Assembly (NCBI GenBank): GCA_024137785.1
Contig: JAHRHZ010000032.1
Coordinates: 13,453,768-13,504,732 of the forward strand
DNA length: 50,965 bases
DNA from: Ginglymostoma cirratum
Taxonomy: Eukaryota
Reading direction: 5' to 3'
Shown here: positions 114 through 31,309 of the stretch, one piece after another
How the letters are laid out: the number at the start of each line of letters is the position of its first letter
Numbering within the stretch: the first letter of the stretch is position 1
Position numbers and translations under genes: made by a program
The notes under the pieces: model-generated
Database searches by the model: none
What the model saw: the letters and a program-made list of their open reading frames with translations, nothing else
Told to the model about the DNA's origin: nothing

Positions 114-1648
114 AGAGATGGTCTTATCTTTGATTCATACTATGGGAGTAGTGAGACTACATGAAGTAAAAACATAAGGATTTGATTTTAAGTACGAGTT
201 TAGCATCAAGGAAGAGACAATGTATGGTGCATAAGAAACATTCTGCATCCAATCTACCCCCAATACATTTCTGGACAGTGTTGTTTCCTTGAGATCAAAT
301 ATATTCAAATGTGCATCATCAAACCATCTGATTACCAGTATTACATGTTACCACAGCCAGGTGGAAATTCAACTTCACAGAATATTAATGAGCTGCAACA
401 TTAGCTGCAAAGGCAGACTTAAATATTTGAGTTGTATGGCATTTTCATTCACATAACAGGTTATATGCTTGCATATTTGCTTTTCTTATTGGAAAAATAT
501 ATTATTCCATTGGTACACTTGGCATGTAACCCTTGACAAGTATTATCTTTGTTCGTGTCTGTTTTTCATCCAATGTATATTACATGTAATGATCTATTCC
601 AGTGTTTAATTAACTCGCCTCCAGAAGTTTGCTGATGTGTGACTGTTTTATGACTTTATCTTGATGATTAGCACAACTATTATATCATGCTGCAATGATT
701 TTGCCAAGTCAGTTTGGATCATGTCACAGGACAGACAATAGTGCGACTCAAAGAGCCAAATATATGTTGCATAAATACAAGTTGCATTAAGCCAAACTTG
801 AAGAAAAAGTGAGGATGACATCAAATTATTGCAGCCAGCAATGAGTGCTCAATGGGCAGAGGTATGGCAAATAATCTTTGTGGATTTTCCCTTGACATCT
901 TCTCGTAAGGACAGAATTTCAAATATTGCAATTATGTCCTATTTAAAAGTTCCCTTTCCTTTCCTCATTACAGCTATCCTAAGTACTTAGGACAAAAAAT
1001 TGTTATGCACTTGTTTTTGAGGATGTGGTTTGCAATCACAAACAACCTGTGCTTGTTGCCATGGAAGGAGGCAGTATGGGAATCAACAGAATGATTTTAG
1101 CAAGTTGCACAGTGCACCCTGCTGACTGATTTCACGCACAATAAGGGGTCTGGTTTCAATTAGCTTGTTGCACTTTGAAACAATCTCTGCCTCTTAAATT
1201 CACAAGATTTGTAGCCTCTTACCTGTTCTTTTGACCATAGTATGGCTGTCCCTACATAAAATTCTGATTGTGGATATTTCAGGAATAGTAATGATGTTGA
1301 ATGTCAAGAGGAGATGATTTGATTGTGTTTTGTTGGAATTGGTTATTGGACGATACCTTGGTTGTGTTAATGTTACTTCAACCCATGACTGAATGCCATC
1401 AGATCTTGCTAGTTCTGTAGTCTGTTTGGCAGTGTGCCCTTCATATCTGGCAGTCTTAATCAGTAGTAGTGGTGCTACCAAATTACTTGTTCATAATGGC
1501 CACTGAAGTTCCTCACCCAGAATATGTTCTCAGTGCTATTTTCAAATGGTGTCCAACGTGGAGGAATGCTGATTCATCAGCTTGAAGAGTTGAGAGCAAG
1601 GTTGGGAGTTGGACTTAGTAAAATGCTTCCTTGCCTATATTTGATGTT

Positions 1649-1817
1649 GTCAAAAGTCACACAACACCATGTTATAGCCCAACAGGTTTCTTCCGGGGAT
1701 GAAGGGGCAGTGCTTCAACAGCTTGCCATTTCAAATAAACCTGTTGGACCGTGACTTGGTGTCGTGTGACTTCTGACCTGGTTCACCCAAGTCTAACACT
1801 GGGACCGCCACATCATT
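1649..1817. mobile_element. Fold-back mini-element, family C (older, internally deleted)
   Basis: Homologous to 9200-9415 in opposite orientation; 13-bp TSD TATTTGA(T/C)GTTGT at 1638-1650 and 1818-1830. Confidence 0.78.
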
Positions 1818-2075
1818 TATTTGACGTTGTGTTGGCACATTAGGGAAGGGAGAAGCACCAAAAAGACAAGCACTAAGAAGTTGGATAGGGTGAATAGTTG
1901 ATTTCTATTTAATTGTGAGTGGTGTGGATAAAGATGTTAGTAAGAAGGATTTGTTTGTTGCTCTTTTTTGTTGAATGGTGACAATGGGGATTCTGTGAAG
2001 TGAAATCTTAATTAGATGTGGCAGTGGTGAATCGCAGGCCTGTAGTGGTCAAAGAAAGCAACTTCATTAAAAACA

Positions 2076-2298
2076 GAGATAACACGGTGTAGAGCTGGAT
2101 GAACACAGCAGGCCAAGCAGCATCAAAGGAGCAGGAGAGCTGACGTTTCGGGTCGAGACCCTTCTTCAGAAAATGTCCTGACCTAGTCTGCTTAATGTCA
2201 GCTTTCCTGCTCCTCTGATGCTGCTTGGCCTGCTGTGTTCATCCAGCTCTACGCCGTGTTATCTCAGATTCTCTGGTATCGGCAGTTTCTACTATCTC
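2076..2298. mobile_element. Fold-back PLE-derived mini-element, family A
   Basis: Two outward-facing copies of the PLE 3' end; 15-bp TSD TCATTAAAAACAGAG at 2064-2078 and 2297-2311. Confidence 0.88.
2141..2169 (-). ncRNA. Minimal hammerhead motif in a fold-back mini-element
   Basis: CUGAAGA-A-GGGUC-UC-GACCC-GAAA-CGUC with a perfect 5-bp stem II. Confidence 0.75.
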
Positions 2299-3334
2299 AT
2301 TAAAAACAGAGTCTGGATTTGCATTCTTTCTCACCCCATCCAGAGAGACAGGGTGCACTCTGCCTCCATTTTTTTCTCCTCTTCCTCATCATTCTTTTCC
2401 TCCTCTTATTCTACCTCGTACTACTCCCAAAGGTCTCTAGACAGAGGCAAACATGGAGCATGCAGCAGGTTACTATGAGATTTGAAACCCACTCTGAAAT
2501 GAATTGTAAAGTTGTAAAAAGCAGTCAAGGAAGTAGAGGTCTGGCTTGAGCAGCCGGAGTCTCTGCTAAAACTTTGCATGACTCCTGCTCATCAATAATA
2601 ATATTTCAGCTTGGCTTGATAAACTCTCTTTTGGTTTTCTGCTCCTCCCAAGGTTTCTTGATAACCTTGTATGAACAATATGGGTTAGTGAAACTTCAAA
2701 AACATGTCCAACATCATCAATCCTTTTGGAATCCCATTTGGAGCAAGGAAAATCAATTGTTAAACGTGCCTATACCCAGCAATGTAGAATAATTGGCAGT
2801 CATCTATATTGTTTATCTTTGCAAATTTATTCCAGTAAATCTCAACACCAAGCAAAATTAGGAGGCGCAAGAATTATTTTTTGCATGAGATTGATAATTT
2901 TAAAAACTTAATTGAAGGCATTGAAAAGAAAATGCAACTTATTAGATGAATGTAATCATGTTATTGTAAAATGTTCAGATTTGAAATGTCAGTCACCAAG
3001 ATAAGCACAGCAAATGAAATGCTTTATCAGAGAACAGTCTGGCAATTCTTGAACGCAAGTGTTGCTTCACGGCATGGCAGTTGCTACAGTTAGTGTTGGT
3101 TTCACAGTTCATTAGAGTGCCACCAAGTGGTGTCTCAGGGCAGTATTGATATTTAACATTGAACTTCCCACTTAGTGTGATGCAATCATTAATCACAGAT
3201 TGGGGTCTAACAGGTATTTGTGGTTGGTAATTTTCATAGTTAACTGTTAGCATTTTCATATAGGAAAGCCTAAAAAAAAGTAACATTTCAAATGGGGTCC
3301 ACAACCTATGGAGATATTTTATTTTCTTCTTTCT

Positions 3335-3622
3335 AGAATCAGAGAATCCCTATAGTGTGGTAGTAGGCCATTTGGCCCATCAAGTCCATACTGACCCTCT
3401 GAAGAGCATCCTACCCAGACTCACTCCCCTACCCTACCGCTGTAACCTTGTAATTCCCAAGGCTAATCCACCTAGCCTGGACTGTGGCAGGAAAGCAGAG
3501 CATCCAGATGAAACCCATGCAGACACAAGGAGAGCATGTAAACACCACCCAAACAATCACCCAAGGGTGGAATCAAACCTGGGTCTGTGAAGCAGCAGTG
3601 CTAACCTCTGAACCACCATGCC
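3335..3622 (-). mobile_element. HE1-type SINE
   Basis: Reverse-complement homology to 28653-28988. Confidence 0.85.
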
Positions 3623-3689
3623 TTGAAGGTATTTTAATGTTTTATAGGTGGAGAGAGAAACCAAAGTGGTGTTAATTGGTTTTATTCTC

Positions 3690-4270
3690 TGGCAAAGCCA
3701 TCATTTATTGCTCATTCCATACTTGCCCCATGAGAAGGCACTGGTAGGTGAATGTTGAAGGTGCTAATTGTGCCAGTTAAGTGCATTGCTTTATCCTGGA
3801 TGGTGTTAAGCTTCTTGTGTATTGTTGGAGCTGCAGTCATTCAGGAAAGTGGAGAGTATTCAATTACACTTCTGACTTTTGCCTTGAATAAAATAAAGAT
3901 GGTGGATGATGTAGATGATGAACACGTTAAGGGAGGTCAGAATTCCTAGTCCCTGACCTGGTCTTACAGCTTCAGTATTTATTTTTCTCATTTAGTTTCT
4001 CGTCAATGGTAAACACCAGATTGTCAATAGTGGGGTATTCAGCAGTAATAAAATCATTGAATGTTGATGGGTGATTCCTAGATCTTCTTTTGAGATAGTT
4101 CATGCTTTGCACTTGAGTGGTGTGAATGTTGCCTACAACTAATAATCCAAAATCTGGGTGGTATCCACATCATGCTGCTTATAGAGGTAAATGACTTCAG
4201 CATCTGAGAAGTGCAAATAATACTAAACATTGTGCAATCACCATTGAACATCTTAACTCAATGAGGGAAG
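3690..4270 (-). mobile_element. Degenerate CR1/L2-like LINE fragment
   Basis: Same tail family plus RT-region remnants; a related piece lies at ~1250-1640. Confidence 0.55.
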
Positions 4271-4394
4271 GTGCGGTATGACTTTGATTGACACTACTGG
4301 CACCTCATGATATCTGCCACCTCTGTCAGTCGGTGTTTCAGAGTAAGGGTTGTTTCAGGTAGTTCATTGTCATCAATCGTTCTTATCAATAAGT

Positions 4395-4650
4395 AAAAAT
4401 AGAAACTGCTGCAGAAACTCAGTAGACTTAGCAGCATCTGTGGTGAGAGAAAACACAGTTAACATTTTGAGAATGATATGACTCTTCTTCAGAACAGGAA
4501 GAGGTTAGGAAATTGTATTTTTTTGCTATTGACAGGGTTGGAGGTGGAGCAAATGGAATGGATGGTGCGGGTATGCAGAACAGCAAACAAAGGGATTGCT
4601 ATTGGTGGGAAAAGAAAAAAAAGCATTATAAATATTGAGAGGCTGAAAAT
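4395..4650 (-). mobile_element. Degenerate family B PLE terminal fragment
   Basis: AACTCAGTAGACTTAGCAGCATCTGTGG...CTCTTCTTCAGAAC, similar to the family B arm. Confidence 0.55.
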
Positions 4651-4829
4651 GGTGGCGTACAAAATAATTTTGCTAACTTTATTCAGGTGTGACAGGACTT
4701 TGACATGCTTGTACAGAAGGCAATTAGGAAAGCACTTTTAACACCATTTACCAATTTCATTGCCAATATTTTCTTTAGCTATGAAAGGATATACTTTCAT
4801 AAGAGCGAGTGCAATGAAACTTCGCTAAA

Positions 4830-5185
4830 CTGAGTTCTGGTATAAGGGGATTACTCTCTGAGGAGAACCAATTAGTCTACACCTATATTCTCTTGCGTTT
4901 AGGAGAATGAAAGCTATGTAACTACAATAATTTAAATTCTTAAGAGCCTGGGCAATGTAGATGCTGGGCCAATGCTTCTCTTGGCTGTGGAGTTTAGAAG
5001 TAAGTATCACAGTCTGAGAATAAGGGGTTGGTTACTTAGGACTGCGAGTAAGGAAATTATATTATTGAGTATCTCGAGATAATATGGGTTAGTTAGTTGA
5101 GACAAAAGATAAACTGTGGTATTATTGAATAATGCAGCAGGCTTGAGGACTAAATAACCTGCTCCTAATCTATTTCTTACCTTTT
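4830..5185 (+). mobile_element. Degenerate CR1 3' end
   Basis: Remnants of LYSLAFRRM and the tail GCAGCAGGCTTGAGGACTAAATAACCTGCTCC. Confidence 0.55.
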
Positions 5186-6989
5186 TTCTGCTTCTACAGA
5201 AACACACAATATAGAAGAATGTCATACTGCCTGTGCTCGTGATTTAGTTGAGCTATCCAATTAGTTCCACATCTTAGCCTTTCTCCCATAGGCTTTCAAG
5301 AATTTATTTGAAAATTAATATTAATCTACTCTTCCCCTCATGCCACCTCTGTTTTTTGGCTCATTATCTTAAACTGTGTCTTTCTATTACTAGAAATGTT
5401 TTCTCCTACACTATTTGATGAAATTTCTGTAAGGTCCAACCAATCTAATGATGTCACACAATCTTGGGTGGTGAAAAGAGGAGTCTAGATTGAGATCCTG
5501 ATGGAGACAGATGTGTCATTGTTGTTTCCTGGCTAATCTTAGTTACTATACTAAACTATCCAATGTTGATTGTATCTATTGCTAGTGTGCTATTGCTATT
5601 GTGAAGGCAGGTGGTGCTCTAGTTAAAACTGATCAGTGGTTGAGCCTGTATTACTGTCAGCCAAATGGTCGCTTGGACTAAATATAGAAAAGAGGATTCG
5701 CAGCAGTACAGTGCACATAGCATGGGGATCTGGGTGAGATTGTTTCTTAAATATCACAAGTTAACAATGGTGAATAAAGTCCATTGCATCTAAGAGAAAA
5801 TAAATTTTAGAAGTTAAATGAGGTTACTGCTTTAAATACTTTGCCTCTTAAAGAATACTCATTAGACAGCACCTGCAAGTGCTTGTGCAAACAAGTAATT
5901 AGTGGAGTTGTGTAAGAAACAAGGCACTTCAGGCTAGAACCATCATTCAAACAAAATATGGGGCACAGAAGAACCAGGGTGAGATTTGGTATTTGACAGC
6001 CAATTTTGGACCTTTGTGAAGGAAGTTTAAAATCCCTGTTGGCAAGTAGATAATGGTTAAATTAATGATGCTAAAGACCAAGTCATGAAAATTAAAAATT
6101 AAAGAAGGAGTACTTATTGTTCGCAGTAGGTGCAGTGACCATGAAGCAGAGCTACTGTAGCAAAGTCAGGAGCCATAGAATTAAGTTACACTGGACTGCA
6201 GTATCAAGAATGTCATTGGGCTCATTTAATGTGATAAAAGGGCAATTTAAAAGCTAGAAGGGAGAGAGTCTAACAGAAGAAGATAGTTTGAAGTCTTTTA
6301 AATCAATAAGAATGGAAGATTAAAGCACAATTTTGCCAAGAAATGTTTTTAAGGCTGCAACCATAAAGCTTTTTTGGAAAGTAATGGAAGGGGATATGCA
6401 ATGTACTTCAGGCTGTGAAAGTTGGGAAAGTGTCCACTTGGTCAATGATAAAGTGGAAAACCTTTAACTTAGCTGCAGAAAGTGTGGAAAACTGTCACTT
6501 AACCTGCAGATGGCAGGAAACCACTACTTTGTGTGTAAAGATGTGGGAAATCCATTAGTAAGCCACACAGAGGTACTATATTGTTATTAAACAAAATTTA
6601 AAGCTTTATTAGAAAAAAAGATACAGAATTGCTACAATATATGATTTATAGCTTTAAAATAAGGAAATAATAAAGCCTTGTTTTAAAGCCTTGTAAGGTA
6701 AAGAAGATAAAACAGCATTGTATAATGTAGACTATAAAATCTATTTAGCAGAGACAGAAATGCAGCAGTGTTTAGATAAAACAGAAATTAAGACATCATG
6801 AAAGGATGAATCATAAATAATTACACCAAGAAGACAAGGCTGGAGATATAATAAAATTGCAGAGATTTAATTTCAGAGATGCGCCAAAGAAAACTCAATT
6901 CTGGATATCTTAGAGAAAACAATACTTACAGCACAGAATGTTTTTCAGCTTTAAATACTAAATCTGTAGTTGATTAAGTAAATACACTA

Positions 6990-7238
6990 AATGATAAAAA
7001 AAGACCCGTGGATGTTAGAAACCAGAAACAAAAACAGAAATTGCTGGGAAAAACTCAGCCAGTCTGGCAGCATCTGTGGCGAGAAGGCAGAGTCAACGTT
7101 TCAATTCCAGTGACCTTTGTTCAGAATGGAAGAATGGGTTCTGAAGAAGGATTACTGGATCCAAAATATTGATTCTGCTTTCTCTGCACAGATGCTGCCA
7201 GCCCTGCTGGGTTTTTCCAGCAATTTCTGTTTTTAAGC
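6990..7238. mobile_element. Fold-back mini-element, family B, inserted in Gypsy gag
   Basis: Inverted arms (AAAAACAGAAATTGCTGG...CCAGCAATTTCTGTTTTT) with decayed hammerhead cores; 14-bp TSD AAGTAAATACACTA at 6976-6989 and 7239-7252. Confidence 0.82.
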
Positions 7239-8570
7239 AAGTAAATACACTACTGTTTTCAATAGGACCTACAGCTGACAACATTCTCAATTTTCAAAAT
7301 ATAAAAGAAGGCACAGACACTTTTGAGTTGCTCTTCAACATTTTGACAATTAATTTAATCTGAATATAAACAAAAATCTTGAAATAACAAGAGTTAGTAA
7401 AGAAGTTCACTATCCAAAGGAATCAATAGAAAATTTCATTAATTATCTCCACAGATCAGTGGAAAACTTTGACTGTAAAGCTTTGAAATCAGATTTTGTA
7501 TGAAACCAAATAATTTTTGAATCATTGATAAGTTTTTGATACATCTAATAAGGTCCAAAGAAAATCTGACTTTGGGAAAGGCTATTCAAAATGTGGTGGA
7601 AGGAACCCTGCAAGAAAACAGAAACCATCCATATAGTATAAACATTCTCTAGGTACACATGACAAGGCATCATAAACAGTTAGTGCTGTAAATAATGTCT
7701 CACAGTTGCAAGTTGTACCAAGTTATGACATACGTATGCTACATCTGTAAAACTATAGGTCACTTCCAGAGGATGTGCAGAAGAAGGACCCAGTTTCAAA
7801 GCAGCAAAAAGCCCAAATTCTTACTCATTTTAATGCTACAGAAACATCAGCAGTAGGAAAAAGCATTCATAGAGTAAATTAGTAATTCAACTGACTGAAC
7901 TTTGACAGAACCTATTTGTGTTCATTGCCATCTCATTTTTTTTATCTTACTACAGGGGTCAGTCTCACTGTCTCATCAGTTGTCTCAAAGGTATTATCCA
8001 TTCCATAATGGATAGGAATACCTGATTGTATTTGCATTGCTGACCATATCATTGTTATGGGTGAGTTAAAGGCAGAGCATGAACACAATTTTCAGCTGCT
8101 GGTGACAGCAATTCAATTCAATTCAAAGGACTAACATTTAACAGAGTCAAATCAACATCAACCTGATAAACCTCTTTGGGTCTATTTATTTTGTCCAGAG
8201 AATCCATTCTATTCCAGTTAAGATTAAGGATAATTAATAAATGCTGACCCCACAGGATGAAGAGCATCTGCAATGTTGCCTTGAATCTTTTAAATTTCCT
8301 ATAGCTATACAATCAGCACCTTGCAGAAAAGGTTTTATCTGCTGAGGGATTAGCTCAAGAAAGACATCTCCTATATGTGGAAATACAACTACCAATATGT
8401 CTTTGCTTCTCTCAAGTAGGTTCTTTCAGCAAAATCTTTCTTATTGTAATACAATTACCCTAGAAAAGACATGATTCTCAAATCCAACGCATTGCAAAAA
8501 GTTTGCAAGACAAAAGACCTATTGCCTTGATTCTAAACCCTGCCATTTGCACAAGTATACATGTCTAGGA

Positions 8571-8885: not shown

Positions 8886-9199
8886 ACCAACTATTCCAAC
8901 ATTGAGGGTGAGACATCAAACCTGGAATTAGGCATCATGCAATTTCACATATACTTATTTTGCAGGAAATTTACCAATGAACCGGATCATAAGCCATCAG
9001 AAACAATATGTCACAAACTGCAAATAAGTGCAGGGCCATTTTTGCAGCGTTTACTTGTCAAGGGGTAAGGATATGACTTTGAAGTGAGATATAAGCCAGG
9101 TGCCAGAATGATTACGTAAACACTCACTGAGCAAATTACCCAATCGATAAAAGACCATGCTATTCCTTTTCACCTATATGGTGATGCTACAGATTATGA

Positions 9200-9415
9200 A
9201 GTGGAGGTGCCAGTGTTGGACTGGGGTGGACAAGGTCAGAAATCACATGACACTGGGTTATAGTCCAACAGGTTTATTTGAAAATATAAGCTTTTGGAGC
9301 CTCACTCCTTCTTCAGGTGTTGAATAGTCAACACCTGAAGAAGGAGTGAGGCTCTGAAAGCTTGTATTTTCAAATAAACCTGTTGGACTATAACCTGTGT
9401 TGTGTGACTTCTGAC
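9200..9415. mobile_element. Fold-back mini-element, family C
   Basis: Near-perfect palindrome 9235-9323 / 9328-9415 with a 4-nt loop (ATAG), plus a ~35-nt unpaired tail on the left. Confidence 0.85.
9335..9364 (+). ncRNA. Hammerhead motif, family C (mirror copy at 9288-9316 on minus)
   Basis: CUGAAGA-A-GGAG-UGAGG-CUCU-GAAA-GCUU. The mirror copy has CUCC-AAAA, implying an ancestral CUCCGAAAGCUU. Confidence 0.68.
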
Positions 9416-10416
9416 ATAGACATTTAAGGTGAAGATCTTCTCAAGGTGATTAGATTTTGGGCACAGCCAGAGTGAACAGTTGAAATTAGAAACTGCCAGA
9501 GATGATCAACTATAAGACTTACATGAGAACATTATTTATGCCATGGCCTGACAGTACTAAATAAGCGTATGAGGCAATTCCTTCATTTTGGTCATAGAAG
9601 GACAAACTTGGTATATTGTGTCAGTTCATCTTCAAGAGCAAACAAGGTCGAATATCAAAAGCATTCTGCCAAGATATGACATCCATGTTATACCAGGAAC
9701 ACATGGTTATAGTACACACAAGTCAGCTAGCACACGAATCTGTGCACTGGCCAGGGATAATTCAAGGTATTCAATGACTTGCATGTGACTAATGCCAAAT
9801 ACATCAAACCTAGCATTGAAGGGAATCTCTTTATCCACATGAAGTTCCTTCCATTCCTTGGACAAAAGTAGCAACAGAACTATTCAGACTATATGGGGAA
9901 TCTTACATCTTTGTGATGGATTACTTCTCTCAATTTCCCATGGTTCAACAACATAACAGTGCAATAAGCATTACCATTGCTGATACACTGAATATTATTT
10001 TCAGTTTATTTAGTATTGCAGATCAAATACAGTCTAACAAAGGACCACAGCACATTGGCAAACCATTTCAAGATGTACACTAAGTAGGGAGTAATCCATA
10101 TTATACCATCACCTATCTACTGATGCTCATATGGTCTAGCAGAACATACAATTCATACTATTAAATCAATGATCATTACTGCACCATCTGCAAAGCAAGA
10201 TTTTCACATTGCATTACTGCATGTTGTGCCACACCAATGGAGAAGGGATTACCATCTAGAGCATAATTTATACTCAGAAGGCAAGTATAAACCCCACTTT
10301 GCATAGCAAATAAGACATTCTTCTTGAAAGACAAATGAGAATTAAGCAGATGGAGGAGCTAGGAGCAAGTAGATAACTACCACAAATGTGCACTGAACAG
10401 ATGGTGTGAATTAGAA

Positions 10417-10643
10417 CAAAGTTGCTGGAAAAGCTCAACAGGTCTGGCAGCGTCTGTGAAGGGAAAAACAGAGTTAATGTTTCGGGTCTGGTGACCCTTC
10501 CTCAGAACTAGTCCGGGTCACCGGACCTGAAATTTTAACTCTGCTTTCTCCTTCACAGATGCTGCCAGACCTGATGAGCTTTTCCAGCAACTTTGTTTTT
10601 GTTCCTGATTTACAGCATCCGCAGTTCTTTCAGGTTTTATTTA
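10417..10643. mobile_element. Fold-back mini-element, family B
   Basis: Inverted arms; 13-bp TSD GTGTGAATTAGAA at 10404-10416 and 10644-10656. Confidence 0.85.
10474..10505 (-). ncRNA. Hammerhead motif, family B
   Basis: CUGAGGA-A-GGGUC-ACCA-GACCC-GAAA-CAUU-AAC. Confidence 0.68.
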
Positions 10644-11221
10644 GTGTGAATTAGAAAGATAAATACGAATATTTGGATATGTGCAAAGGTTTCAAGAATA
10701 ATGTAGCTACACTGTGAAGGAACAGAAGCTAGCTCAGAGCAATGTAAAGCCCACCAATCAGACATAAAGGGAGTGAGGAAGAATAGTCCAAGAATGATGA
10801 TTTTGTGATGATGTTGAGTGATAGCAACCAGCAGCAAGACAACCAAATTGTCAAACAAGTGCAAAAGACAACAGTGCGTATCTCTTTAGGCAGGTATACG
10901 ATCAACAGAGTAAGATAAATTGTTAAAAATTCAAAGGCTTACATTGAAGTTTAAAATGTTAGCCTTGTAAACTGTTTTTACCTGTTTGTACAATTATTAA
11001 AATGGTACAGATACAATCATGTATGTCTGTTTGGGATTTATTTTTATCTAAGGAACAAGTGAGATGTGTCATGTCTCACAGCCAGTCTGTTAGTATACTT
11101 TTAAGAGACATGCTCATGATATCAGCACCACATCATAGTATGGGAGCCAACAGTAAAAGAGCTCAGACTCTATCTTACCTCAGATCACTCTCATGCAACT
11201 ATGTTTCTCTCTTATAACATT

Positions 11222-12026: not shown

Positions 12027-12078
12027 TGGTGGTGGTGGTGGTGGTGGGAGGGGGGAGGGTGGGGAAGGGGTGGGGGGG
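12027..12078 (+). repeat. (GGT)n plus G-run tract with G-quadruplex potential
   Basis: TGGTGGTGG...GGGAGGGGGGAGGGTGGGGAAGGGGTGGGGGGG. Confidence 0.6.
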
Positions 12079-12719
12079 CACTCTGATTCACTGTATTTAG
12101 GTACATGTGACTACAATAAACCAAATTAAATATATTACCTGTGACGGGGATAGTCCACATGGGAAGCCTACAGCACTGCATGGGTTGGTATGAAACAAAG
12201 ATGGGAGAGAGCTGAACCTAGTTTGTGGGTCCCCAACAATAAGCCCATTAAAGGCAACATACACCCCCTCCCCTAACTCCAAACTTCATAACTCTCCCTT
12301 TGTCCACTCCCCTGATCTTTCAAACCCTGTTTCCATCTCCTTCACTGTGGCTGCCACCTGGCCTTGACATTAATCTGGGCTTATCTCTAAGCCTGGGCTC
12401 CTCTTTGTCAGGACTTGCTGTGTTCCCAGCAGTGAGCACCACTCCCACACTGCACTTCAGGGACTTCAGAGATGCTGGTCATCCAAATGCTGAGAGTTCT
12501 CTAAGGCAGGGCTACATCCCCAGACACAGACAGATATTTTCCAGTGTTAAATTGTTTGGGATGGCTGGCAGGGTTGTGAACAGGATCTCCCTCAACCTTT
12601 TAGCCAGGGGTCAGGGTCTTGACACCTAGTTAAATACAGCCCAGAGTTCCGGCACATATTGAGTGAAGTGTGAGCCATTCTCAGGAAATTTGCAGTGTCT
12701 GTAATTTCAAAGGCCAATG

Positions 12720-13340
12720 ATTTTGAAATTGGCCAGATAGAGGCTGCATGAAATTGAATAGGGCAAAATGTGAAGTGATACATTTTTAAAGGAGGAAGGT
12801 GAATTATAAATGTAGAAAATAACAATAAAAGAAAACAAATGCTAAAACATTAAGGCAACTAAATGAGTAGCTTTACAGATCTTTTAAAATGGAAGATCAA
12901 ATTGTCCATTTTATAATAAACTAAACATTTAGTATCTTAGGTTTTGTAAGTAAGAACACAGTACATAAACAAAGTGGTAACACTGTCTGAATCATTGGTT
13001 AAGGTTCAGCTTGAATATTGTCTCCAATTTCCATTTCCAAGAGGGTTCATTCAGATATTAAAGTGATACAAAGCTTGAGAAACTGGGCTCTTCTAATTAG
13101 TAGAAGAAAGATTAAGAGGGACTTGAGTGGGTGTTCAAAATTCTGAAGATTAGGACTTTTAATGGAGAATTGTTAGATAATCTACTACTATCAGGAACTA
13201 GGTGTACATTAGCTTTTAAGAGGAAAGGAAACTTTTTTTAAAGTACCAGGATATGGGAAGAGAGCAAGCAAGTGGGTCTGCTTTGAGTAGGTGAGCAGAT
13301 GCATGATGAGCTATTCCTTCAGTACAGTCAAGTTCTATAT
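12720..13340 (+). mobile_element. Degenerate CR1 fragment
   Basis: AAATGTGAAGTGATACATTTT (KCEVIHF) and CAGCTTGAATATTGTCTCCAATT (QLEYC.Q) motifs. Confidence 0.55.
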
Positions 13341-13993
13341 TTAAAAAAGCATTTTTTTCTCAGTGGTTAATAAAAAAACTAACCAATTTGAACACATAGG
13401 GACAATCTATAAAAACTGGAGGCTAAATTGCATATTTAAATGCTGAAATGCTCGATCAGCATTATTGACAATTATGCTGGGAGCAAGTTCACTGCTGTTT
13501 CTCTGAAACTGATGCTATGGATTTTAGGGAGTCAGTGCAAGGAAGCACCTCCAGGAAAACATCTCAGGCTGTTAGAAGGGCTGGAAAATGAAGCCTTGGT
13601 GCCTGAGCTGTTTTCCCTCCCAAGAAAACACATTTAAACATGTCAAAAAAACACATGCTCCTATCTTCTTGGCACACTGGTTTCCAAAGAGGTATTATAT
13701 TTCTCAGAGGCTGGAGTTACAAGAACAAGTGAGTCTCCATTCCAGTGTCTTTGTCCAGAGAAGACAGAGGCTTCACACGAAACCAGGGCTACCAAAATTC
13801 CTAATATATGGCAACACCTGTCCTATCTAACCTAGTTTGTAGGCTTTCAACCTCATTCTCTTCAGAGTTACAGCAGGAGTATTTAGAAAACATCAAGGAT
13901 TTGTGTTCCTCTCCTGATCAAGGGGATTAAAATAATTGATTGCTTTGGTACAACTGATGACATGACTTTTTTTTACATGTCTTGTGTTTGCAT

Positions 13994-14082
13994 TTATTGT
14001 GGTACCCTTCCCATACTTTCATAGATGTCATCGTCTTCATTGTTTCTATCTTTATGAGATTGTTTATTCTTCATTGTTTTAC
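13994..14082 (-). CDS. Terminal cytoplasmic exon of the Ig receptor with Tyr motif
   Basis: Acceptor TTTCTTTTATCTTGACAG, phase 1. Encodes GKTMKNKQSHKDRNNEDDDIYESMGRVPQ*, an acidic run before YxxM. AATAAA overlaps the stop. Confidence 0.72.
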
Positions 14083-15409
14083 CTGTCAAGATAAAAGAAA
14101 GTATGATTATGATTAGTGTTCCTTCAAGAAATAGGGCAACATTCATACTTACATACGATTGCACATTAATTTGGACTGCAAGATGTCATTGGTGATTACC
14201 ACTTGATGGGGAGATTCAGGACATTAATTTGTAACTATAATACTTCAATACAAATATGTAAAATCATATATGTTTTCATCTATTATTATATGCTTGTTTT
14301 ATATTCCCCTTGTCTAAGACCTCTGCATGCTCTCACTTTAGATGGTTAACAGGAGGTCTCCAGAAATATTGCTTTTGATGCAATGTGTGGTTTGTAAAAG
14401 CATCCAGCAGCTTTTAAAACAAAACAGCACCTGGTTAACTGCAAGAAAAGCAAGTTATCATTAACTACACTAAATGCATCTTCACAGTGCATTCTATACT
14501 CACATGCAGAATCTATTCTCCTTTCCTGCTCATCACGGGCAGGGTGCAAGGTAGGGGAATTAAAATTGAGGCCAATGTCTCAGTTTAATCCTGTTATAAT
14601 ATACACCATCACTTTCACTTTGATATGAAAAGGTCTCTGAAGTGTATCAAAATGAAATTGGTGGTTTAACTTGGAAATGAGTCCTGATTTGACTCCTGAA
14701 ACCAATGAAGTTTGGAGGCGTGAGAAGCTGCCTGGTAGGAAATCTCACACCAGTTAAAGTTCACAGCAAGTGTTTGCATAACCTTTGCATAACATTGCAA
14801 CTTAATTTTCAAAATGCCTGTATATTTTTCAAGTGTAAGTGTACAATGATTTTCACTTAAAATGGAAGTGGGTCTCTCCCCTGCACTTTTCCCAATATTA
14901 AAAATGAGCTTTCAAGCATGCTGAAACACAACTCCAGATCATCAACCATAACTGGGGTTTGACAGCTGTACATTACATGTTAACTGGTTTCACATCATTA
15001 CCAGCTGTATAATGGCAGCCCAGCTGTACCTAAATAGATCTAATTACACATTGGCAATCAAGTTTTGTCCGATCAGTTTCTCCAAAGCAACGGCATTTTT
15101 CTCTCCCAGTTCAACTTTCAAAATTCCACTGCAATGATGACATGGCCTGAAATGTGGAACAGTTGATGGCTGGACAAATTTCACACTGTGAAAACTACAG
15201 AAAAGCAACTGCCATGCACAATTGTTTTGAAGTTATGAGTTATAATGTGTATTTTTTCTGAATGGTTAAGGTTGGTGGATGGTGTGGGTTGGTAAGTGTG
15301 AAACACAACTGCATCACATTAGTGATAAAATTGATAGCAGCTTCTGACTTTATCAATGAATATAGCAGAGAATCTACCAGTGGGTATGTCGCTGATTGCC
15401 AAAACAAAC

Positions 15410-15496
15410 CACTGCGGTCATTGAAGTCAATGTGAATACATAAGGCATCATTTCCAAAGTCCATATATGTGCCAATTTCATTTTCAAAGCCTATCT
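15410..15496 (-). CDS. Candidate internal cytoplasmic exon of the Ig receptor
   Basis: Acceptor ACTTTCCTGTAG, weak donor G|GTTTGT, 87 nt, phase 1-1. Encodes EIGFENEIGTYMDFGNDALCIHIDFNDRS; the frame stays open to 15240 if the donor is skipped. Confidence 0.45.
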
Positions 15497-16169
15497 CTAC
15501 AGGAAAGTCATGGCTTGATTTTCCACAGGGTACGGACTGTTTTGGGTAGGTTTGGGTGAATGGGAGATGTTGGGTCCAGCAGGAAGTGGGGTGTCAGGTC
15601 CTGCGTGGGAAAGGGAGGGATGTTGAGTCCTGGGATTCATGTCAGGTTTGTTGGAGGGAGAGAGGGAATCGAGTCCAGCAAAGGGGAAAGGGTCCTAGAT
15701 ACAGGAAGAGAGGGGTTGTGTTAGGTTCTGGAAGGTATGAAGGGTCTAGATGAGCTCCAGTTGTAGGAGTAGTGGGGTAAGGTGAGACTCAGTTTCACAG
15801 TTTTCCAGGAGTTAGACTAATTTTACAGACTAACATCTCCTGAGTAACTATTTATTTAATTTCAGTGAAACTTCCCAAACTCTCCAATTTAAAAGAACAC
15901 CTTTGGAGGGTTCCAGATGGGCGTGTAATTGCCCAGTGGAATCTGCAATTTCAGAGTCTCTTCAGAGTGTCCTACTCTGGGGCTTGTGCAACACAGTAAT
16001 GCACAACCTTCATCTATGTTGCAGAAAAAAACTGTTTGGCCATCAGAAAACTGGGTCAATGTTGATTCAGGGATGTATAGTGGTCAGGTTACCATGTTTA
16101 TCTTCTCTGTTCTTCTTGAAAATGGTAACATAGAATCTCTTACGTTCTCCTGAGAGACCAGAAAGAATG

Positions 16170-16310
16170 ACTAATGTAAAATATGGCATCTCTGACAGTG
16201 CAGGATTCCCTTAATACTGCACTGACATATCAGCCTAGACTATGTCAATAACTCCAAAAACTTATGATACACTGCCAAATGGTAACAACTGAACCATGGC
16301 TTATGGTGGT
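16170..16310 (-). mobile_element. DeuSINE (SacSINE1/AmnSINE-like) Deu-domain fragment
   Basis: GGCATCTCTGACAGTGCAGGATTCCCTTAATACTGCACTG...TCAGCCTAGA resembles the conserved Deu core. Confidence 0.55.
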
Positions 16311-16993
16311 ACAGAAGTGGGTGGGTTGGTAAAAAGGATGTCTCAGGATTCAGACTTTTAACACTTTAACCTCCCACCTCCATCCAAAACCATGCACTTT
16401 TTGAAGTTAAAATTCCTCCAATGAATCTAGACAATTCTTGAGATTTTCATTTTGAGATACTATACTTCAATTCTTGAGATCTTAGAATTTTTAAAAATAA
16501 TCACACTTTAGGTTTATAGTTTAGTTTAATACTTTGTCTGAATAATGAAAATGCATCAACATGAAAAATTAGTTCTGTTTTTCTCTCCAGATGAGACCTG
16601 GCCTGTTGAGAATTCCCAGCATTTTTCACTTCTTTTTCAGCATCAATGGTATTTCATCTATGTACACACATTATATGTTAGTACTTACTACAAGAAAACA
16701 AAGGATATTGTTTCGGAAATTTAAAATCGTTGATATTGTAATGTGGCTGCATGTTTGCTTATGTGACATTTATAGAAGCAGACAATGACAAAATGAGTTA
16801 TTTTGCACTCTTGGTATGAGTTGTTTGCCGGGTTGACTCGTTATGAAGCACGCCATCCTTTAAAGTCCATTACATTTTATGGACTTTAAGATAATTGCAA
16901 GGTCATAGAGTTCTACAGCATGGAAACAGACACTTTGGTCCAACTCGTCCACGTCAACCAGATATCCTAAATTAATCCAGTCCTTTTTGAAGA

Positions 16994-17029
16994 TTTTCTG
17001 AAGAAGGGTTTAGGCCCGAAACGTCAAGT
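16994..17029 (+). ncRNA. Minimal hammerhead motif
   Basis: CUGAAGA-A-GGGUUUAGGCCC-GAAA-CGUC-AAG. Confidence 0.75.
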
Positions 17030-17125
17030 TTTCCTGCTCCTATGATGCTGCTTGACCTGCTGTGTTCATCCAGCCCCATGCTTGTTATCTCGGATTCTCC
17101 AGCATCTGCAGTACCTTTTTATCTC
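16994..17125 (+). mobile_element. PLE 3' terminus fragment with hammerhead motif
   Basis: CTGAAGAAGGGTTTAGGCCCGAAACGTCAAG through the tail TTTTATCTC. Confidence 0.88.
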
Positions 17126-17713
17126 TGATACCATTAAACAACCAGTCTGACGAACGACATAACAGTGAAATTTGACTACAAAATTGCACAAAATATTATT
17201 TGATGCATGGTTATTTTTGCTATATTATGTTGTAAATCAATGATAATAATTGCCCAGGATTAGAACATTTTATTGTTGATTATTTCTGTAGAAAAGTTCA
17301 GAGACATCTGTAAATGCTAAAGTTTCGTTTTCCAAAGCTGTTAAAACCATAGTTGATTATGAGAAAGTTTACTGGGTGGAGCAAAGGTCCTGTAAGGATT
17401 CTGGGTGAAAGTAGATTTGGCAATCACAACTAGCAAATACACTGATGTTAATCATTTAAAAAAAAAACTCCGATTTTTGGTATCTCCATGCAAACACCAG
17501 TAAAACTTCACGAATAAAAATGAACTCTCAGAAAGTTATTAACTAAACTTTATAATTCATGTAATCCTGATATATATCCTCTCTAATTATGCTTATTATT
17601 TCTGTACATTAATATGTTCATTAGTGACTTAAACCTCTTCATTTCCTTTTCTTCCTTAAAATTCTTTCCATTGATCTAGATTTTCTTCATCTTGCCTGAC
17701 AGATAACATACCC

Positions 17714-17921
17714 GAGATAACAAGGTGTAGAGCTGGATGAACACAGCAGGCCAAGCAGCATCAGAGGAGCAGGAAACAAGCCCAAGGAGCAGGCCTTCCA
17801 GGCCTGGAAGGCCCGAAACGTCAGCTTTCCTGCTCCTCTGATGCTGCTAGGCTTGCTGTGTTCATCCAGCTCTACACCTTGTTATCTCAGATTCTCCAGC
17901 ATCTGCAGTTCCTACTATCTC
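17714..17921. mobile_element. Fold-back PLE-derived mini-element, family A, intronic in the Ig gene
   Basis: Inverted arms; 15-bp TSD CAGATAACATACCCG at 17700-17714 and 17921-17935. Confidence 0.88.
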
Positions 17922-18680
17922 AGATAACATACCCGCTCTGGCTCAGTCTCTATTTTTCACTATTTATTCACACATCATTCTTTCTGTACGGACAAATAAC
18001 TGCCTTCCCACAGATTTCCACCAAGCTGAGGGCAAACTTGAAAGAGAATCCTGACAGAAATTAACAAAGACTTTCAAGCATTTTCTCTCATCATTCATTG
18101 CCTTTCAGTAAATCTATATTGGCGTATCAATTGTTTAATAAGTAACCACATTTCATGACTAAATTTCATAGTGGGGCCTGTTTTTAGAGATCAATTCCAT
18201 TGTGGGTATTTACAACATTGGGTTATTTTTCTTTAAGTTAATTCTTGGGTGTGAGTATTGCTGACAAGAACAACATTTATTGCACACATATCATTGCCCT
18301 AACTGGTGTTGGAGTTTGTGAGAAACTTTGTCTTGAATTGCATAGCATTTTGATACAACTGAATGACTTGCTAAATCATTTTTGAGGGCAGGTAAGAATT
18401 AAGTAAATTAATTAGGTACTATAGTTCTCAAATGGTAGATAGGGATTGCAGGTTTACTCACTAAAGCGTATTAGAGAACTAATTTTTTGACATTTCAACA
18501 ATTTCAATTTATTTTACTGATTCCAGTTTATTTTCTCTATTTATACTTTTTAAACAAGATATTTTAATCAATGTTTATTTTTGTCACCTATTGGTTCCTG
18601 ATTAGTACCTAGCATAGAACAATATTTTGTTTTGCATTCTCAGTCACGTAGCTATCCATTTTTATTTTGTCTCCACTTAC

Positions 18681-18800
18681 CTTGCCTTCTTGACCTTCTC
18701 CTGCAATGTCTCACAACAGCCCATGTCAAAATAGTTACGCTGATTAGTGCTCCTGTTCCAGACAATGCACCTATCAAACCATAATTTACCATGATGTAAT
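18681..18800 (-). CDS. Transmembrane exon of the Ig receptor
   Basis: Acceptor TTTACTTTTTAG, donor G|GTAAGT, 120 nt, phase 1-1. Encodes DYIMVNYGLIGALSGTGALISVTILTWAVV followed by the basic stop-transfer RHCRRRSRRQ. Confidence 0.88.
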
Positions 18801-19410
18801 CTAAAAAGTAAACCAAATATGTTAGATGAAACTAGGTGGGATTGACTAGATATTCCATTAATGAATATGACCATAATTCAATGAGTTCCTGCAGTAGCAG
18901 GAGTTGTGCAATTTACTTCTTTATAACCAAGTAGGAATGGGCATTGTTATCATTTGGGTATTGTTCTCAGATAAGCACTTTTATAAAGTATACTTAATTG
19001 CTAGCCACACAATTAACTTTTTGATCAGGAAATGGAAGCCTGTTTACATGCTACCAAAATTCAATTCAAACACACCAATGATATAGCACTCCTCCCTTGC
19101 GTCACCAAATTGTCCGCCTACTTATGAACTCAAAACTTGTTTTGGGCTGTGTATTATACAAGGAGATAAACATAATTTATTTGGTCAAATGCTGCAACTC
19201 CCGACATATTTCAATCAAATGAATATAGAGATTTTCAAGAGTTGGGGGTACTTTTAGAAGTTGGAAATGGAAATAAGAGCAGAATATCAGACAGAAATAT
19301 ATTAGATTTTGTATTATATTATAACTTATAACTTATGCATAGCTTTATAACTTTTATAACTTATACATTAGTTTCACAAAATGATAATGCTGGTCAAACA
19401 GAATTCTTAC

Positions 19411-19488
19411 CATTGGTTTCATTAGCTTTCATGAAAGTGAGGTTAAAGACTGCAGTTGTGTTCCAACCATTATATATTTGTACTTCCT
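19411..19488 (-). CDS. Stalk exon of the Ig receptor
   Basis: Acceptor TTTCATTTTCAG, donor G|GTAAGA, 78 nt, phase 1-1. Encodes EEVQIYNGWNTTAVFNLTFMKANETN with three N-glycosylation sequons. Confidence 0.8.
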
Positions 19489-19799
19489 CTGAAAATGAAA
19501 ATGTGAACAAGGAATTAATAACAAACAAGGAACTGACTCTTGTTACAAATCACGTCTTTGTGATTTAGGATACTGTCAAGTGTACATGTTACCACAAGGT
19601 GTAGGAAATTTCCTTTTTTAATAATGATTAGTATGTCACCCGTGGTTTTTCTTCCGGATGGAGGTGACTTGAGAAACTCTGAGGACTGGACAGCAACTGG
19701 AGATTGTGGAAACTACCAAGGAGTTGAGCATAGTCCTAAATGTTTGTTATGGAGTCAATAGAAGCTTGGCTAGTGGCAAGTGAAGATATTTTGGGGTAA

Positions 19800-19940
19800 T
19801 ACTGAAAAATGCTGGAGAAACTCAGCAGGTCTGGCAGCATCTGTGGAGAAAGACAGAGTTAATACTTCAAGTCTGGTATGATTCTTCTTTGAAACTGTGT
19901 TGATTTCAGATTTCCAGTATCCACAGTTTTTGCCTTTATA
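19800..19940. mobile_element. Degenerate family B mini-element
   Basis: GCTGGAGAAACTCAGCAGGTCTGGCAGCATCTGTGG followed by the tail ATTTCAGATTTCCAGTATCCACAG. Confidence 0.65.
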
Positions 19941-20400
19941 TGAGATTTTGGGTGTTACTTGCAACTAAAATGCTGCTTTTATTGCTACATAATCAATTCC
20001 TATTGGCTGGGCCACTGTCAGATTCTTCACACAACTGTGGTTTTTCTATTCATCAATCCTGTCAGATTTAGCAATCAGTCCACAGGCCAGGAGAGTTCAG
20101 CCACTCAGAATGACTGGACATGTTCACAGCAACTTAAAGAGAAATATATTTGCATTTACAGTCACCTAACGTCATTTTTAAAAAGTAGACTAAGGACAAC
20201 TAATGTAAGTGCTGGAGCTTTAAATACGAAATACATAAAGGACTTATGTTAAATAGCAGATTGCTGATGTGCTGAGATTCTACTAGTATTGCATAGGTTT
20301 GGTCTCGCCACATTGCTGTGAAATACTCCAAGCAGTTGGACTATGGTGTAAATTGCTCCTCATGGAAAGATTTATGCCGATAAACACCTTTGACCACAAG

Positions 20401-31273: not shown

Positions 31274-31309
31274 TCTTGACGTTTCGGGCCTAGACCCTTC
31301 ATCAGAAAT
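31274..31309 (-). ncRNA. Minimal type I hammerhead ribozyme motif in PLE terminal repeat
   Basis: Minus strand reads UUU-CUGAUGA-A-GGGUC-UA-GGCCC-GAAA-CGUC-AAG: conserved core, stem II, palindromic ACGU in place of stem III, GUC cleavage triplet. Confidence 0.8.

What the first reader, a model, noticed from the sequence alone, without database searches (positions are those of the whole stretch)
1638..19960. A multi-family system of non-coding, hammerhead-bearing fold-back mini-retroelements
Seen: six clear ~170-250 bp elements, each made of two outward-facing copies of a PLE-type 3' end, in three sequence families. A: 2076-2298, 17714-17921. B: 6990-7238, 10417-10643, with relics at 19800 and 23328. 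C: 9200-9415, 1649-1817. Each family has its own hammerhead variant (GAAACGUC, GAAACGUU, GAAAGCUU), always with a palindromic stem III. They look like MITEs but have long TSDs, and family A matches the RT/GIY-YIG elements in this window. Inference: either a retrozyme-like class of hairpin RNAs mobilised in trans by PLE proteins, or the commonest abortive product of PLE integration. Families B and C predict two further autonomous PLE partners elsewhere in the genome.
Basis: partly seen in the sequence, partly recalled or inferred. Interest (0 to 1): 0.88.

Follow-up and report, generated by a model that had tools for sequence, protein, structure and literature searches.

The report
Penelope retrotransposon mini fold-back insertions
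The six short hairpin-like repeats are real, but they are dead-end by-products of Penelope-like retrotransposon integration in a shark genome, a structure already described in other animals, not a new class of self-propagating hairpin elements.

Summary
Six inverted-repeat elements sit at the stated places. Five have clear 13-15 bp target-site duplications (TSDs). All six carry minimal hammerhead (HHR) motifs with a palindromic stem III.

They are not a replicating hairpin family.
- The RT/GIY-YIG Penelope-like element (PLE) copies at 31.2-33.7 kb and 47.2-50.4 kb have the same layout: two outward-facing 3' ends, a 14-bp TSD, and a 31-40 nt "tail" on one arm only.
- The central junction differs between the two copies of each family.
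- In contigs of the same species, the C1 junction has at most single-copy depth, while the arms run about a thousand-fold or more above it. Other family-B fold-backs show many different junctions.

The literature already covers this: inverted truncated copies and a one-sided tail, opposite-strand HHR pairs, and extension of both DNA strands in vitro.

Two details I did not find in the papers read.
- Most short arms are not randomly truncated. They start 0-8 nt upstream of the CUGANGA box, and in long A copies that point lies 31 nt after a TATA-like motif.
- All eight complete insertions with two canonical ends have one tailed and one tailless arm.

Family B is homologous to family A. Autonomous partners for B and C could not be tested. 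The scan has noted the same thing on other pieces of this genome.

The parts
2064..2311 (.). A1 fold-back with its TSDs (2064-2078 and 2297-2311). Left arm on the - strand, 2079-2172, tailless, with an intact hammerhead at 2142-2169. Filler of about 2173-2193. Right arm on the + strand, 2194-2265, truncated at GAAA, followed by a 31-nt tail at 2266-2296.
17700..17935 (.). A2 fold-back with its TSDs (17700-17714 and 17921-17935). The two arms meet in a near-perfect palindrome at about 17802/17803. The right arm carries the tail at 17889-17920. The hammerhead region is partly deleted or rearranged.
6976..7252 (.). B1 fold-back with its TSDs (6976-6989 and 7239-7252). Left arm on the - strand: tail 6990-7029 and body 7030-7127. 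Filler of about 7128-7135. Right arm 7136-7238, tailless. Both arms reach the 5' edge of the hammerhead, and both cores are mutated.
10404..10656 (.). B2 fold-back with its TSDs (10404-10416 and 10644-10656). Left arm on the - strand, 10417-10509, full length to position -4 and tailless. Filler 10510-10514. Right arm 10515-10604, truncated inside helix II, followed by the tail at 10605-10643.
9197..9415 (.). C1 fold-back. Left arm on the - strand: tail 9197-9234 and body 9235-9323. A 4-nt centre at 9324-9327. Right arm 9328-9415, tailless, with an intact hammerhead at 9335-9363. No clear TSD.
1638..1830 (.). C2 fold-back with a 12/13 TSD (1638-1650 and 1818-1830). Left arm on the - strand, 1649-1693, truncated and tailless. 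Right arm 1698-1777 followed by the tail at 1778-1817. The hammerhead is decayed.
19788..19953 (-). Family-B insertion with very unequal arms and a TSD of about ATTTTGGG(G)T. One arm is full length and tailless (19799-19895, - strand). The inverted partner consists only of the tail plus a few nucleotides.
31166..33702 (.). Coding A-type PLE insertion with the same layout. TSD ATAACACAGG(A/G)GGA. Inverted arm 31180-31756 on the - strand, with the tail and an intact hammerhead at 31278-31305. Direct arm 31757-33692 on the + strand, carrying RT and GIY-YIG remains, tailless, with its hammerhead at about 33599-33626.
47167..50455 (.). Second coding PLE fold-back, TSD CAGTTTAGCATCAT (47167 and 50442). 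The - arm, about 47181-49540, encodes RT and endonuclease and ends at the TATA-like region without a hammerhead. The + arm, about 49590-50441, carries the tail.
16997..17125 (+). Solo A-type mini-insertion with an intact hammerhead (16998-17025) and a tail. Its 5' end is ATTTT|CTGAAGA. It is 100% identical over 108 nt to the copy at 1-108.

Best explanation
Each element is one integration event of a Penelope-like retrotransposon (PLE).

**Proposed mechanism.** The PLE's GIY-YIG endonuclease cuts both DNA strands 13-15 bp apart. Both 3'-OH ends then prime reverse transcription of the element's terminal RNA region. The two cDNAs grow toward each other and are joined head-to-head. This leaves two outward-facing 3' ends flanked by a target-site duplication.

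**Tail asymmetry.** One arm starts at the distal reverse-transcription start site and keeps the 31-40 nt tail. The other arm starts at the proximal site and has no tail.

**Why the mini elements are short.** The template segment is short. Most arms run from a start site back to a fixed point 0-8 nt upstream of the hammerhead's CUGANGA box. I infer that this point is the 5' end of the RNA, that is, the transcription start site inside the pseudo-LTR. On this reading the minis are run-off copies of the segment between the transcription start and the RT start sites.

**Fate of the copies.** The copies do not include the upstream TATA-like region and carry no ORF. They are therefore dead on arrival and decay neutrally. 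The hammerhead is simply carried along.

**Shown versus inferred.** Shown: the anatomy, the TSDs, the unique junctions and the match to coding PLEs. Inferred: both-strand priming in vivo (demonstrated in vitro only, for an Anolis PLE) and the transcription-start origin of the sharp 5' end.
For: - **Same layout in coding copies.** The RT/GIY-YIG copies at 31166-33702 and 47167-50455 have inverted arms, 14-bp TSDs and a tail on one arm.
- **Junctions differ within the window.** The two copies of each family have different central junctions.
- **Junctions differ genome-wide.** At the C1 junction, depth is 0-10 in the same species, where single-copy baseline is about 20. In a sister species it is 73-92. 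Depth on the arms is 1e4 to 1e6. Skip-joints from 10505-10509 to 10545-10594 carry different filler sequences, which means other B fold-backs have other junctions.
- **One-sided tail.** All 8 complete insertions with two canonical ends have one tailed and one tailless arm. If the two arms chose their start sites independently, the probability is at most 0.5^8, about 0.004.
- **Sharp 5' ends.** Five of five long B arms begin at (A)GTT|CTGA. A arms begin at ATTT(T)|CTGA. C1 arms begin at TCAACAC|CTGA. In one search, many copies lose similarity exactly at 10508/10509: 140 contigs in the same-species run (at 10509), 1356 contigs in the sister-species run, and 3171 RNA reads. What follows is heterogeneous (agreement 0.34-0.41).
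- **Promoter-like signals.** Long A copies have TATTTAT 31 nt upstream of the A in CCATTTC, which is the point where the mini arms begin.
- **B is homologous to A.** Profiles of B and A hit each other, including the coding copies' ends, with E values from 9e-11 to 1e-6. The two families share a tail motif, CAGCATC[CT]GCAGT.
- **Literature.** Inverted 5'-truncated copies and a 30-40 bp tail at one end are standard PLE features (PMC8557442). An Anolis PLE cleaves and extends both strands and starts reverse transcription at two adjacent internal sites that bracket the tail (PMC11167929). Pairs of minimal hammerheads 100-700 bp apart on opposite strands have been reported (PMC4209133).
Against: - Both-strand target-primed reverse transcription has been shown only in vitro and only for a lizard PLE.
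- There is no RNA evidence here for a 5' end at the hammerhead edge. The one RNA-seq lay showed only read-through reads on both strands and no preferred starts or ends.
- The transcription-start reading rests on a sequence motif in four long A copies and on about a dozen arms.
- Three of the twelve arms are truncated elsewhere.
- C1 has no clear TSD.
- The - arm of the 47-kb copy ends at a non-canonical place.
- One family-B junction contig has depth 324 against a baseline of about 20. Some fold-backs may therefore exist in several copies.
- No coding partner was seen for B or C.
Confidence: 0.75

Rival explanations
1. The fold-backs are a non-autonomous, retrozyme-like or SINE-like family. 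The whole hairpin would be transcribed and re-inserted as a unit by PLE proteins acting in trans.
For: The arms are extremely abundant. C1 and A2 are near-perfect palindromes. One family-B junction contig has depth 324 against a baseline of about 20. Non-LTR retrozymes are thought to derive from PLE pseudo-LTRs (bioRxiv 10.64898/2026.07.22.740005).
Against: Junctions differ in all three family pairs. The C1 junction is essentially single-copy while its arms are at least a thousand-fold deeper. Many different family-B junctions exist. There are no same-strand tandem hammerheads, so unit-length RNA cannot be cut out. Hammerhead cores decay freely. Coding copies show the same fold-back, so no special hairpin family is needed.
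Confidence: 0.06
2. The arms are ordinary, randomly 5'-truncated abortive cDNAs. Their short length would reflect only poor processivity of the reverse transcriptase.
For: PLE insertions are known for heavy 5' truncation (PMC8557442). Three of twelve arms (A1 right, B2 right, C2 left) and the relic arms are truncated at assorted points.
Against: Nine of twelve arms, plus the solo copies at 16998 and 4492 and the long arm of the unequal fold-back at 19799-19895, end within 0-8 nt of the CUGANGA box. Five of five long B arms end at the same 3-5 nt. Genome-wide, similarity is lost at 10508/10509 and heterogeneous sequence follows.
Confidence: 0.1
3. Snap-back origin. A single cDNA would fold back on itself at a hairpin such as helix II and prime its own second strand, producing the inverted arm without any priming from the second DNA strand.
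For: The centres are very small in C1 (4 nt) and A2 (about 2 nt), with near-perfect symmetry.
Against: A self-copied arm should carry the same outer end as its template, yet one arm always has the tail and the other lacks it. Fillers of 5-21 nt and unequal arm lengths occur in A1, B1 and B2. Both-strand extension has been shown directly in vitro (PMC11167929).
Confidence: 0.07
4. The elements are MITEs, that is, deletion derivatives of a DNA transposon with terminal inverted repeats.
For: They are short, non-coding, inverted-repeat elements with TSDs.
Against: The TSDs are 13-15 bp and vary in length. The arms of A are the 3' ends of RT/GIY-YIG retroelements, and B is homologous to A. The termini are asymmetric, with a one-sided tail. 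Central junctions vary.
Confidence: 0.01

Closest known systems
Penelope-like element (PLE) insertions with an adjacent inverted 5'-truncated copy and a one-sided 30-40 bp tail (Craig et al. 2021, PMC8557442; Frangieh et al. 2024, PMC11167929)
   Same: Two outward-facing 3' ends, TSDs, a tail at one end only, a minimal hammerhead in the terminal repeat, and an RT plus GIY-YIG ORF in the long copies of family A.
   Different: Here both arms are reduced to about 45-140 nt, so the whole insertion is only 170-250 bp and non-coding. Most arms end at one defined point at the 5' edge of the hammerhead rather than at random. Partners for families B and C were not seen.
Minimal hammerhead ribozymes of metazoan PLEs (Cervera and de la Pena 2014, PMC4209133)
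   Same: The CUGANGA box, an extra nucleotide before helix II, a G10.1-C11.1 pair, no loop 3, palindromic positions 15.2/16.2, and a helix I of 3-4 bp. That paper also reports thousands of dispersed copies and some pairs on opposite strands 100-700 bp apart.
   Different: Sharks were not among the species named in the parts of that paper read here. The pairs here are closer together, with the two cores 0-50 nt apart. No cleavage activity was tested.
Metazoan non-LTR retrozymes (Cervera and de la Pena 2020, PMC7229834; Li et al. 2026 preprint)
   Same: Short, non-coding, hammerhead-bearing sequences related to PLE pseudo-LTRs.
   Different: Retrozymes are same-strand tandem repeats with at least two hammerheads that release circular RNAs of 170-400 nt. 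The elements here are inverted pairs or solo copies, so no unit can be excised.
L1 twin priming (established knowledge: Ostertag and Kazazian 2001, cited from memory and not read here)
   Same: Both ends of a staggered break prime reverse transcription, which gives an inverted segment inside one TSD-flanked insertion.
   Different: In L1 the inverted part is a different, more 5' region of the same RNA. Here both arms copy the same terminal region.

Membership tests
Penelope-like element (insertion product) | An ORF with a telomerase-like RT and a GIY-YIG endonuclease in autonomous copies | tested here: met
   Met for family A only. Pfam GIY-YIG matches the ORF at 32474-33343. The closest protein is a Rhincodon typus protein at 88% identity, which scores just above the Pfam cut-off for GIY-YIG and has a sub-threshold RVT_1 match. 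tblastn maps RT and endonuclease on 31.8-33.2 kb and 47.5-49.5 kb. The six mini elements have no ORF. For B and C no coding copy was seen.
Penelope-like element (insertion product) | A minimal hammerhead in the terminal repeat | tested here: met
   Five strict motifs against 0.005 expected. Decayed versions are present in the other arms. Helix II shows compensatory changes between families: G-C to A-U at 10.3/11.3, and U-A to G-C at 10.4/11.4.
Penelope-like element (insertion product) | [quoted passage not shown] | tested here: met
   All 8 complete insertions with two canonical ends have one tailed and one tailless arm. The 47-kb copy also has a tail on one arm only, but its other arm ends non-canonically. 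The tails of A and B are homologous.
Penelope-like element (insertion product) | An adjacent inverted 5'-truncated copy, and a TSD | tested here: met
   C1 lacks a clear TSD.
Non-LTR retrozyme | Same-strand tandem repeats carrying two or more hammerheads | tested here: not met
   No two hammerheads lie in the same orientation within one element. The direct-repeat search found no tandem units of these families.
Non-LTR retrozyme | Expression as unit-length linear and circular RNA | tested here: inconclusive
   In the poly(A) RNA-seq run, reads lie equally on both strands, 98% run on into unrelated sequence, and there are no preferred starts or ends. That library type cannot detect small or circular RNAs.
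Rfam Hammerhead type I (canonical) | A match to the Rfam covariance model, which expects helix III and loops 1 and 2 | tested here: not met
   No hammerhead family appears at the gathering score, at E<=10 on 25 kb, or at E<=10 on a 91-nt slice holding an intact motif. This is the expected result for the minimal, dimer-type variant.
MITE (DNA transposon derivative) | Terminal inverted repeats matching a transposase element, with a short TSD of fixed length | tested here: not met
   The arms are the 3' ends of a retroelement. TSDs are 13-15 bp. The termini are asymmetric.

The most novel reading that the evidence does not exclude
The mini fold-backs may be a genomic record of how PLEs integrate in vivo. 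On this reading, a dimeric PLE complex copies one short RNA segment, running from the pseudo-LTR's transcription start to two adjacent RT start sites. It copies that segment twice, once from each cut DNA strand, and each start site is used exactly once. That would explain why every insertion has one tailed and one tailless arm, and why the tailed arm is usually the shorter one. If correct, a simple census of these relics would map the transcription start and both RT start sites for every PLE family, and would show that use of the two sites is coupled rather than independent.
Probability: 0.3. Interest if true: 0.55.

Novelty: new member of a known kind. Interest (0 to 1): 0.3.

Why it matters
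The finding does not reveal a new class of mobile element. It explains a very abundant shark repeat as the smallest form of a known PLE insertion structure. That helps repeat annotation, because these elements can be mistaken for MITEs or miRNA hairpins: Rfam miRNA models hit them spuriously.

For PLE specialists, two regularities are worth a genome-wide check. One is the sharp 5' end at the hammerhead edge. The other is the pairing of one tailed with one tailless arm in every insertion. Together they would carry the in-vitro picture (both strands extended, two RT start sites) into natural insertions, and they suggest the two start sites are used in a coordinated way.

Tried and rejected
No shark loci could be fetched to look for RT/GIY-YIG ORFs upstream of B or C arms, or to collect more junctions.
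- **Indirect link through proteins.** I tried to connect B and C arms to ORFs through protein N-termini. The first 200 residues of 17 full-length PLE representatives gave no match to any arm. This is uninformative, because those proteins are 50%-identity cluster representatives of unknown species.
- **Open reading frame in the arms.** A frame runs open through the whole A and B units and at first suggested an ORF start. Family C has no such frame, and I did not pursue it.
- **Rfam.** It gave only spurious miRNA-hairpin hits and no hammerhead.
- **"Opposite strands" joints.** I first considered them other fold-backs. I rejected that, because they switch between the two arms at the same element coordinate, so they are alignment artefacts.
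- **C1 TSD.** The best flank alignment is 10 of 13 matches and is displaced from the element ends, so it is not convincing.
- **Earlier scan notes.** A search by sequence and two searches by words returned nothing.
- **Hammerhead cleavage as the source of the sharp 5' end.** Rejected, because the cleavage site lies about 30-37 nt downstream of that end.

Full report
**1. The observation**

Five of the six are flanked by direct duplications:

| Element | Target-site duplication | Positions |
|---|---|---|
| A1 | TCATTAAAAACAGAG (15 bp) | 2064 / 2297 |
| A2 | CAGATAACATACCCG (15 bp) | 17700 / 17921 |
| B1 | AAGTAAATACACTA (14 bp) | 6976 / 7239 |
| B2 | GTGTGAATTAGAA (13 bp) | 10404 / 10644 |
| C2 | 12 of 13 matches | 1638-1650 / 1818-1830 |
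| C1 | none convincing | - |

I wrote a strict minimal-hammerhead descriptor after Cervera and de la Pena 2014. It requires CUGANGA, an optional extra nucleotide, a helix II of at least 4 bp, GAAA, a palindromic 15.2/16.2 pair, and U followed by H. It finds five intact motifs in the window, against 0.005 expected in shuffled sequence.
- The intact motifs lie at 9335-9363 (+), 16998-17025 (+), 50748-50775 (-), 31278-31305 (-) and 2142-2169 (-).
- The remaining arms carry the same motif with point changes, many at CpG.
- Helix II shows compensatory differences between families. Position 10.3/11.3 is G-C in A and B and A-U in C. Position 10.4/11.4 is U-A or U-G in A and B and G-C in C.
- Rfam detects no hammerhead, even on a 91-nt slice. 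It reports only spurious miRNA-hairpin matches to the fold-backs. That is expected for this loop-less, dimer-type variant.

**2. What the elements are**

The stretch 31166-33702 holds a PLE copy with GIY-YIG and RT remains. Its closest protein is a whale-shark (Rhincodon typus) protein at 88% identity, which has a GIY-YIG match just above the Pfam cut-off and a sub-threshold RVT_1 match. This copy has the same plan as the minis:
- an inverted arm at 31180-31756;
- a direct arm at 31757-33692;
- both 3' ends facing outward;
- a TSD, ATAACACAGG(A/G)GGA;
- a tail of about 33 nt on one arm only.

A second coding copy at 47167-50455 is also a fold-back. Its TSD is an exact 14-bp repeat, CAGTTTAGCATCAT.

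Family A arms match these 3' ends at 85-91%. Family B is homologous to A over the whole unit, from the hammerhead to the tail. Profiles of the two families hit each other, and the B profile hits the ends of the coding copies with E values from 9e-11 to 1e-6. Family C shares only the architecture: a minimal hammerhead, about 50 nt from the cleavage site to the proximal end, a tail of about 39 nt, and a 13-bp TSD.

In total the 51-kb window holds about 17 PLE-derived insertions.

**3. Do the fold-backs replicate as units?**

- Within the window, the central junction differs between the two copies of each family.
- I laid contigs of the same species (run X1), contigs of a sister species (X4) and two RNA runs (X21, X22) on 9000-10800.
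- On the arms, summed contig depth is 1e4 to 4.5e5 in X1, where single-copy baseline is about 20. In X4 it reaches 4.9e6. The tool warns that summed depth is not a copy number.
- At the C1 junction (9325-9328), depth is only 0-10 in X1 and 72-92 in X4.
- For family B, many skip-joints run from 10505-10509 to various points between 10545 and 10594, each with a different filler (TTC, TTCTG, ATGGAAG, TTGC, GGGG, GG and others). These are other fold-backs made of one full-length arm and a variably truncated partner.
- One such junction contig has depth 324, so a few junctions may be multi-copy. I record this as an open lead.
- The "opposite strands" joints in the same table switch arms at the same element coordinate. 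I treat them as alignment artefacts.

Contigs of the sister species, about 3.9% diverged, run from the flanks into the outer ends of C1 and B2. Both insertions therefore predate that species split.

**4. Comparison with the literature**

The layout is a textbook PLE feature.
- Craig et al. [quoted passage not shown]
- Cervera and de la Pena 2014 (PMC4209133) define the minimal hammerhead. [quoted passage not shown] They note thousands of dispersed copies and some pairs on opposite strands 100-700 bp apart.
- Frangieh et al. 2024 (PMC11167929) show that a purified Anolis PLE cleaves and extends both DNA strands. They also show that reverse transcription starts at two adjacent internal sites whose spacing equals the tail.
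- Retrozymes (PMC7229834; the 2026 preprint) are same-strand tandem arrays. These elements are not.

The scan has already flagged the same elements on other pieces of this genome, and one follow-up reached a similar verdict.

**5. Two regularities not stated in the papers I read**

*Sharp 5' ends.* The short arms are mostly not randomly truncated. Nine of the twelve arms, the solo copies at 16998 and 4492, and the long arm of the unequal fold-back at 19799-19895 begin 0-8 nt upstream of the CUGANGA box.
- Family A arms begin at ATTT(T)|CUGA.
- Five of five long B arms begin at (A)GUU|CUGA.
- C1 arms begin at UCAACAC|CUGA.
- These few nucleotides are exactly the 5' strand of helix I.
- Genome-wide, many copies lose similarity at 10508/10509: 140 X1 contigs (at 10509), 1356 X4 contigs and 3171 RNA reads. 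The sequence that follows is heterogeneous, with agreement 0.34-0.41.
- In the four long A copies, TATTTAT lies 31 nt upstream of the A in CCATTTC, which is the nucleotide where the minis begin. That is canonical TATA-to-initiator spacing.

I infer that the minis are run-off cDNAs from the RT start sites back to the transcription start of the pseudo-LTR. The copies would then lack the promoter and be dead on arrival. This step is inference. I have no RNA 5'-end data.

*Tail asymmetry.* All eight complete insertions with two canonical ends have one tailed and one tailless arm (A1, A2, B1, B2, C1, C2, the 31-kb copy and the 19.8-kb relic). Independent choice of start site would give this with probability of at most 0.004. 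Among the six insertions with unequal arms, counting the 47-kb copy, the tailed arm is the shorter one in five. One speculative explanation is that both polymerases of a dimer copy the same RNA, one from each start site.

**6. Limits**

Coding partners for B and C, and a larger set of junctions, could not be obtained.
- Only one reads-lay call was allowed. It covered C1 and B2 only.
- The RNA run is poly(A)-selected and shows only read-through signal.
- No hammerhead activity was tested.

**7. Verdict**

The "hairpin retroelement class" reading is not supported. The "integration by-product" reading is supported, with the refinement that most arms are complete copies of a short, defined RNA segment. 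These are new members of a known kind, of moderate-to-low interest overall, with a specialist-level lead on PLE mechanism.

Noticed in passing
window 1-108 and 17012-17119: Two A-type mini-insertions at different loci are 100% identical over 108 nt, and the second has an intact hammerhead. They closely resemble the long copy that starts at 50675. This suggests very recent activity of this PLE subfamily.
   Followed up: partly
window 47167-47200: The - arm of the 47-kb PLE fold-back encodes RT and endonuclease over about 2.4 kb. It ends at the TATA-like CTATTTAT motif, directly next to the TSD, so it lacks the hammerhead and the usual 3' terminal segment of about 100-130 nt. This outer end is non-canonical and unexplained.
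   Followed up: partly
window 10505-10575 (reads lay): A contig of the same species joins a full-length family-B arm to a partner arm truncated at about position 60, with filler TTC. Its depth is 324 against a single-copy baseline of about 20. This particular fold-back junction may therefore exist in roughly 16 copies, perhaps inside a larger repeat.
   Followed up: no
window 24826-25326 (-): A 166-aa ORF has an immunoglobulin V-set domain (Pfam E=1.3e-8). It is probably an exon of an immune-type receptor gene. Another note of the scan covers this stretch.
   Followed up: no
window 3339-3484, 23487-23549, 23792-23937, 29693-29838: Another dispersed repeat family, about 60-130 nt, containing ...CCCTGTAACC..CATT.CCCA.GGCTAATCCACCT... 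It is unrelated to the PLE arms and was not identified.
   Followed up: no
window 23333-23420 (-) and 24034-24105 (+): Two family-B 3' ends face outward about 600 bp apart. One is tailless and the other has a tail. The sequence between them contains copies of the unidentified repeat listed above. It may be one fold-back with later insertions or a cargo. No clear TSD was found.
   Followed up: partly
window 47299-47555 and 49980-50173: Tandem repeats of 77-97 nt, G-rich on one strand and C-rich on the other, lie inside the 3' UTR region of the PLE copies. This region accounts for the strong GC skew of 32-34 kb and 46-50 kb.
   Followed up: no
window 16993-17127, 10510-10648 (element orientation): One reading frame stays open through the whole A unit and the whole B unit, from hammerhead to tail, and gives similar peptides (..RPET..ML[LP]DLL..SS..). 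In the Anolis PLE the ORF starts inside the hammerhead, so this may be the start of the PLE ORF. Family C has no such frame.
   Followed up: partly
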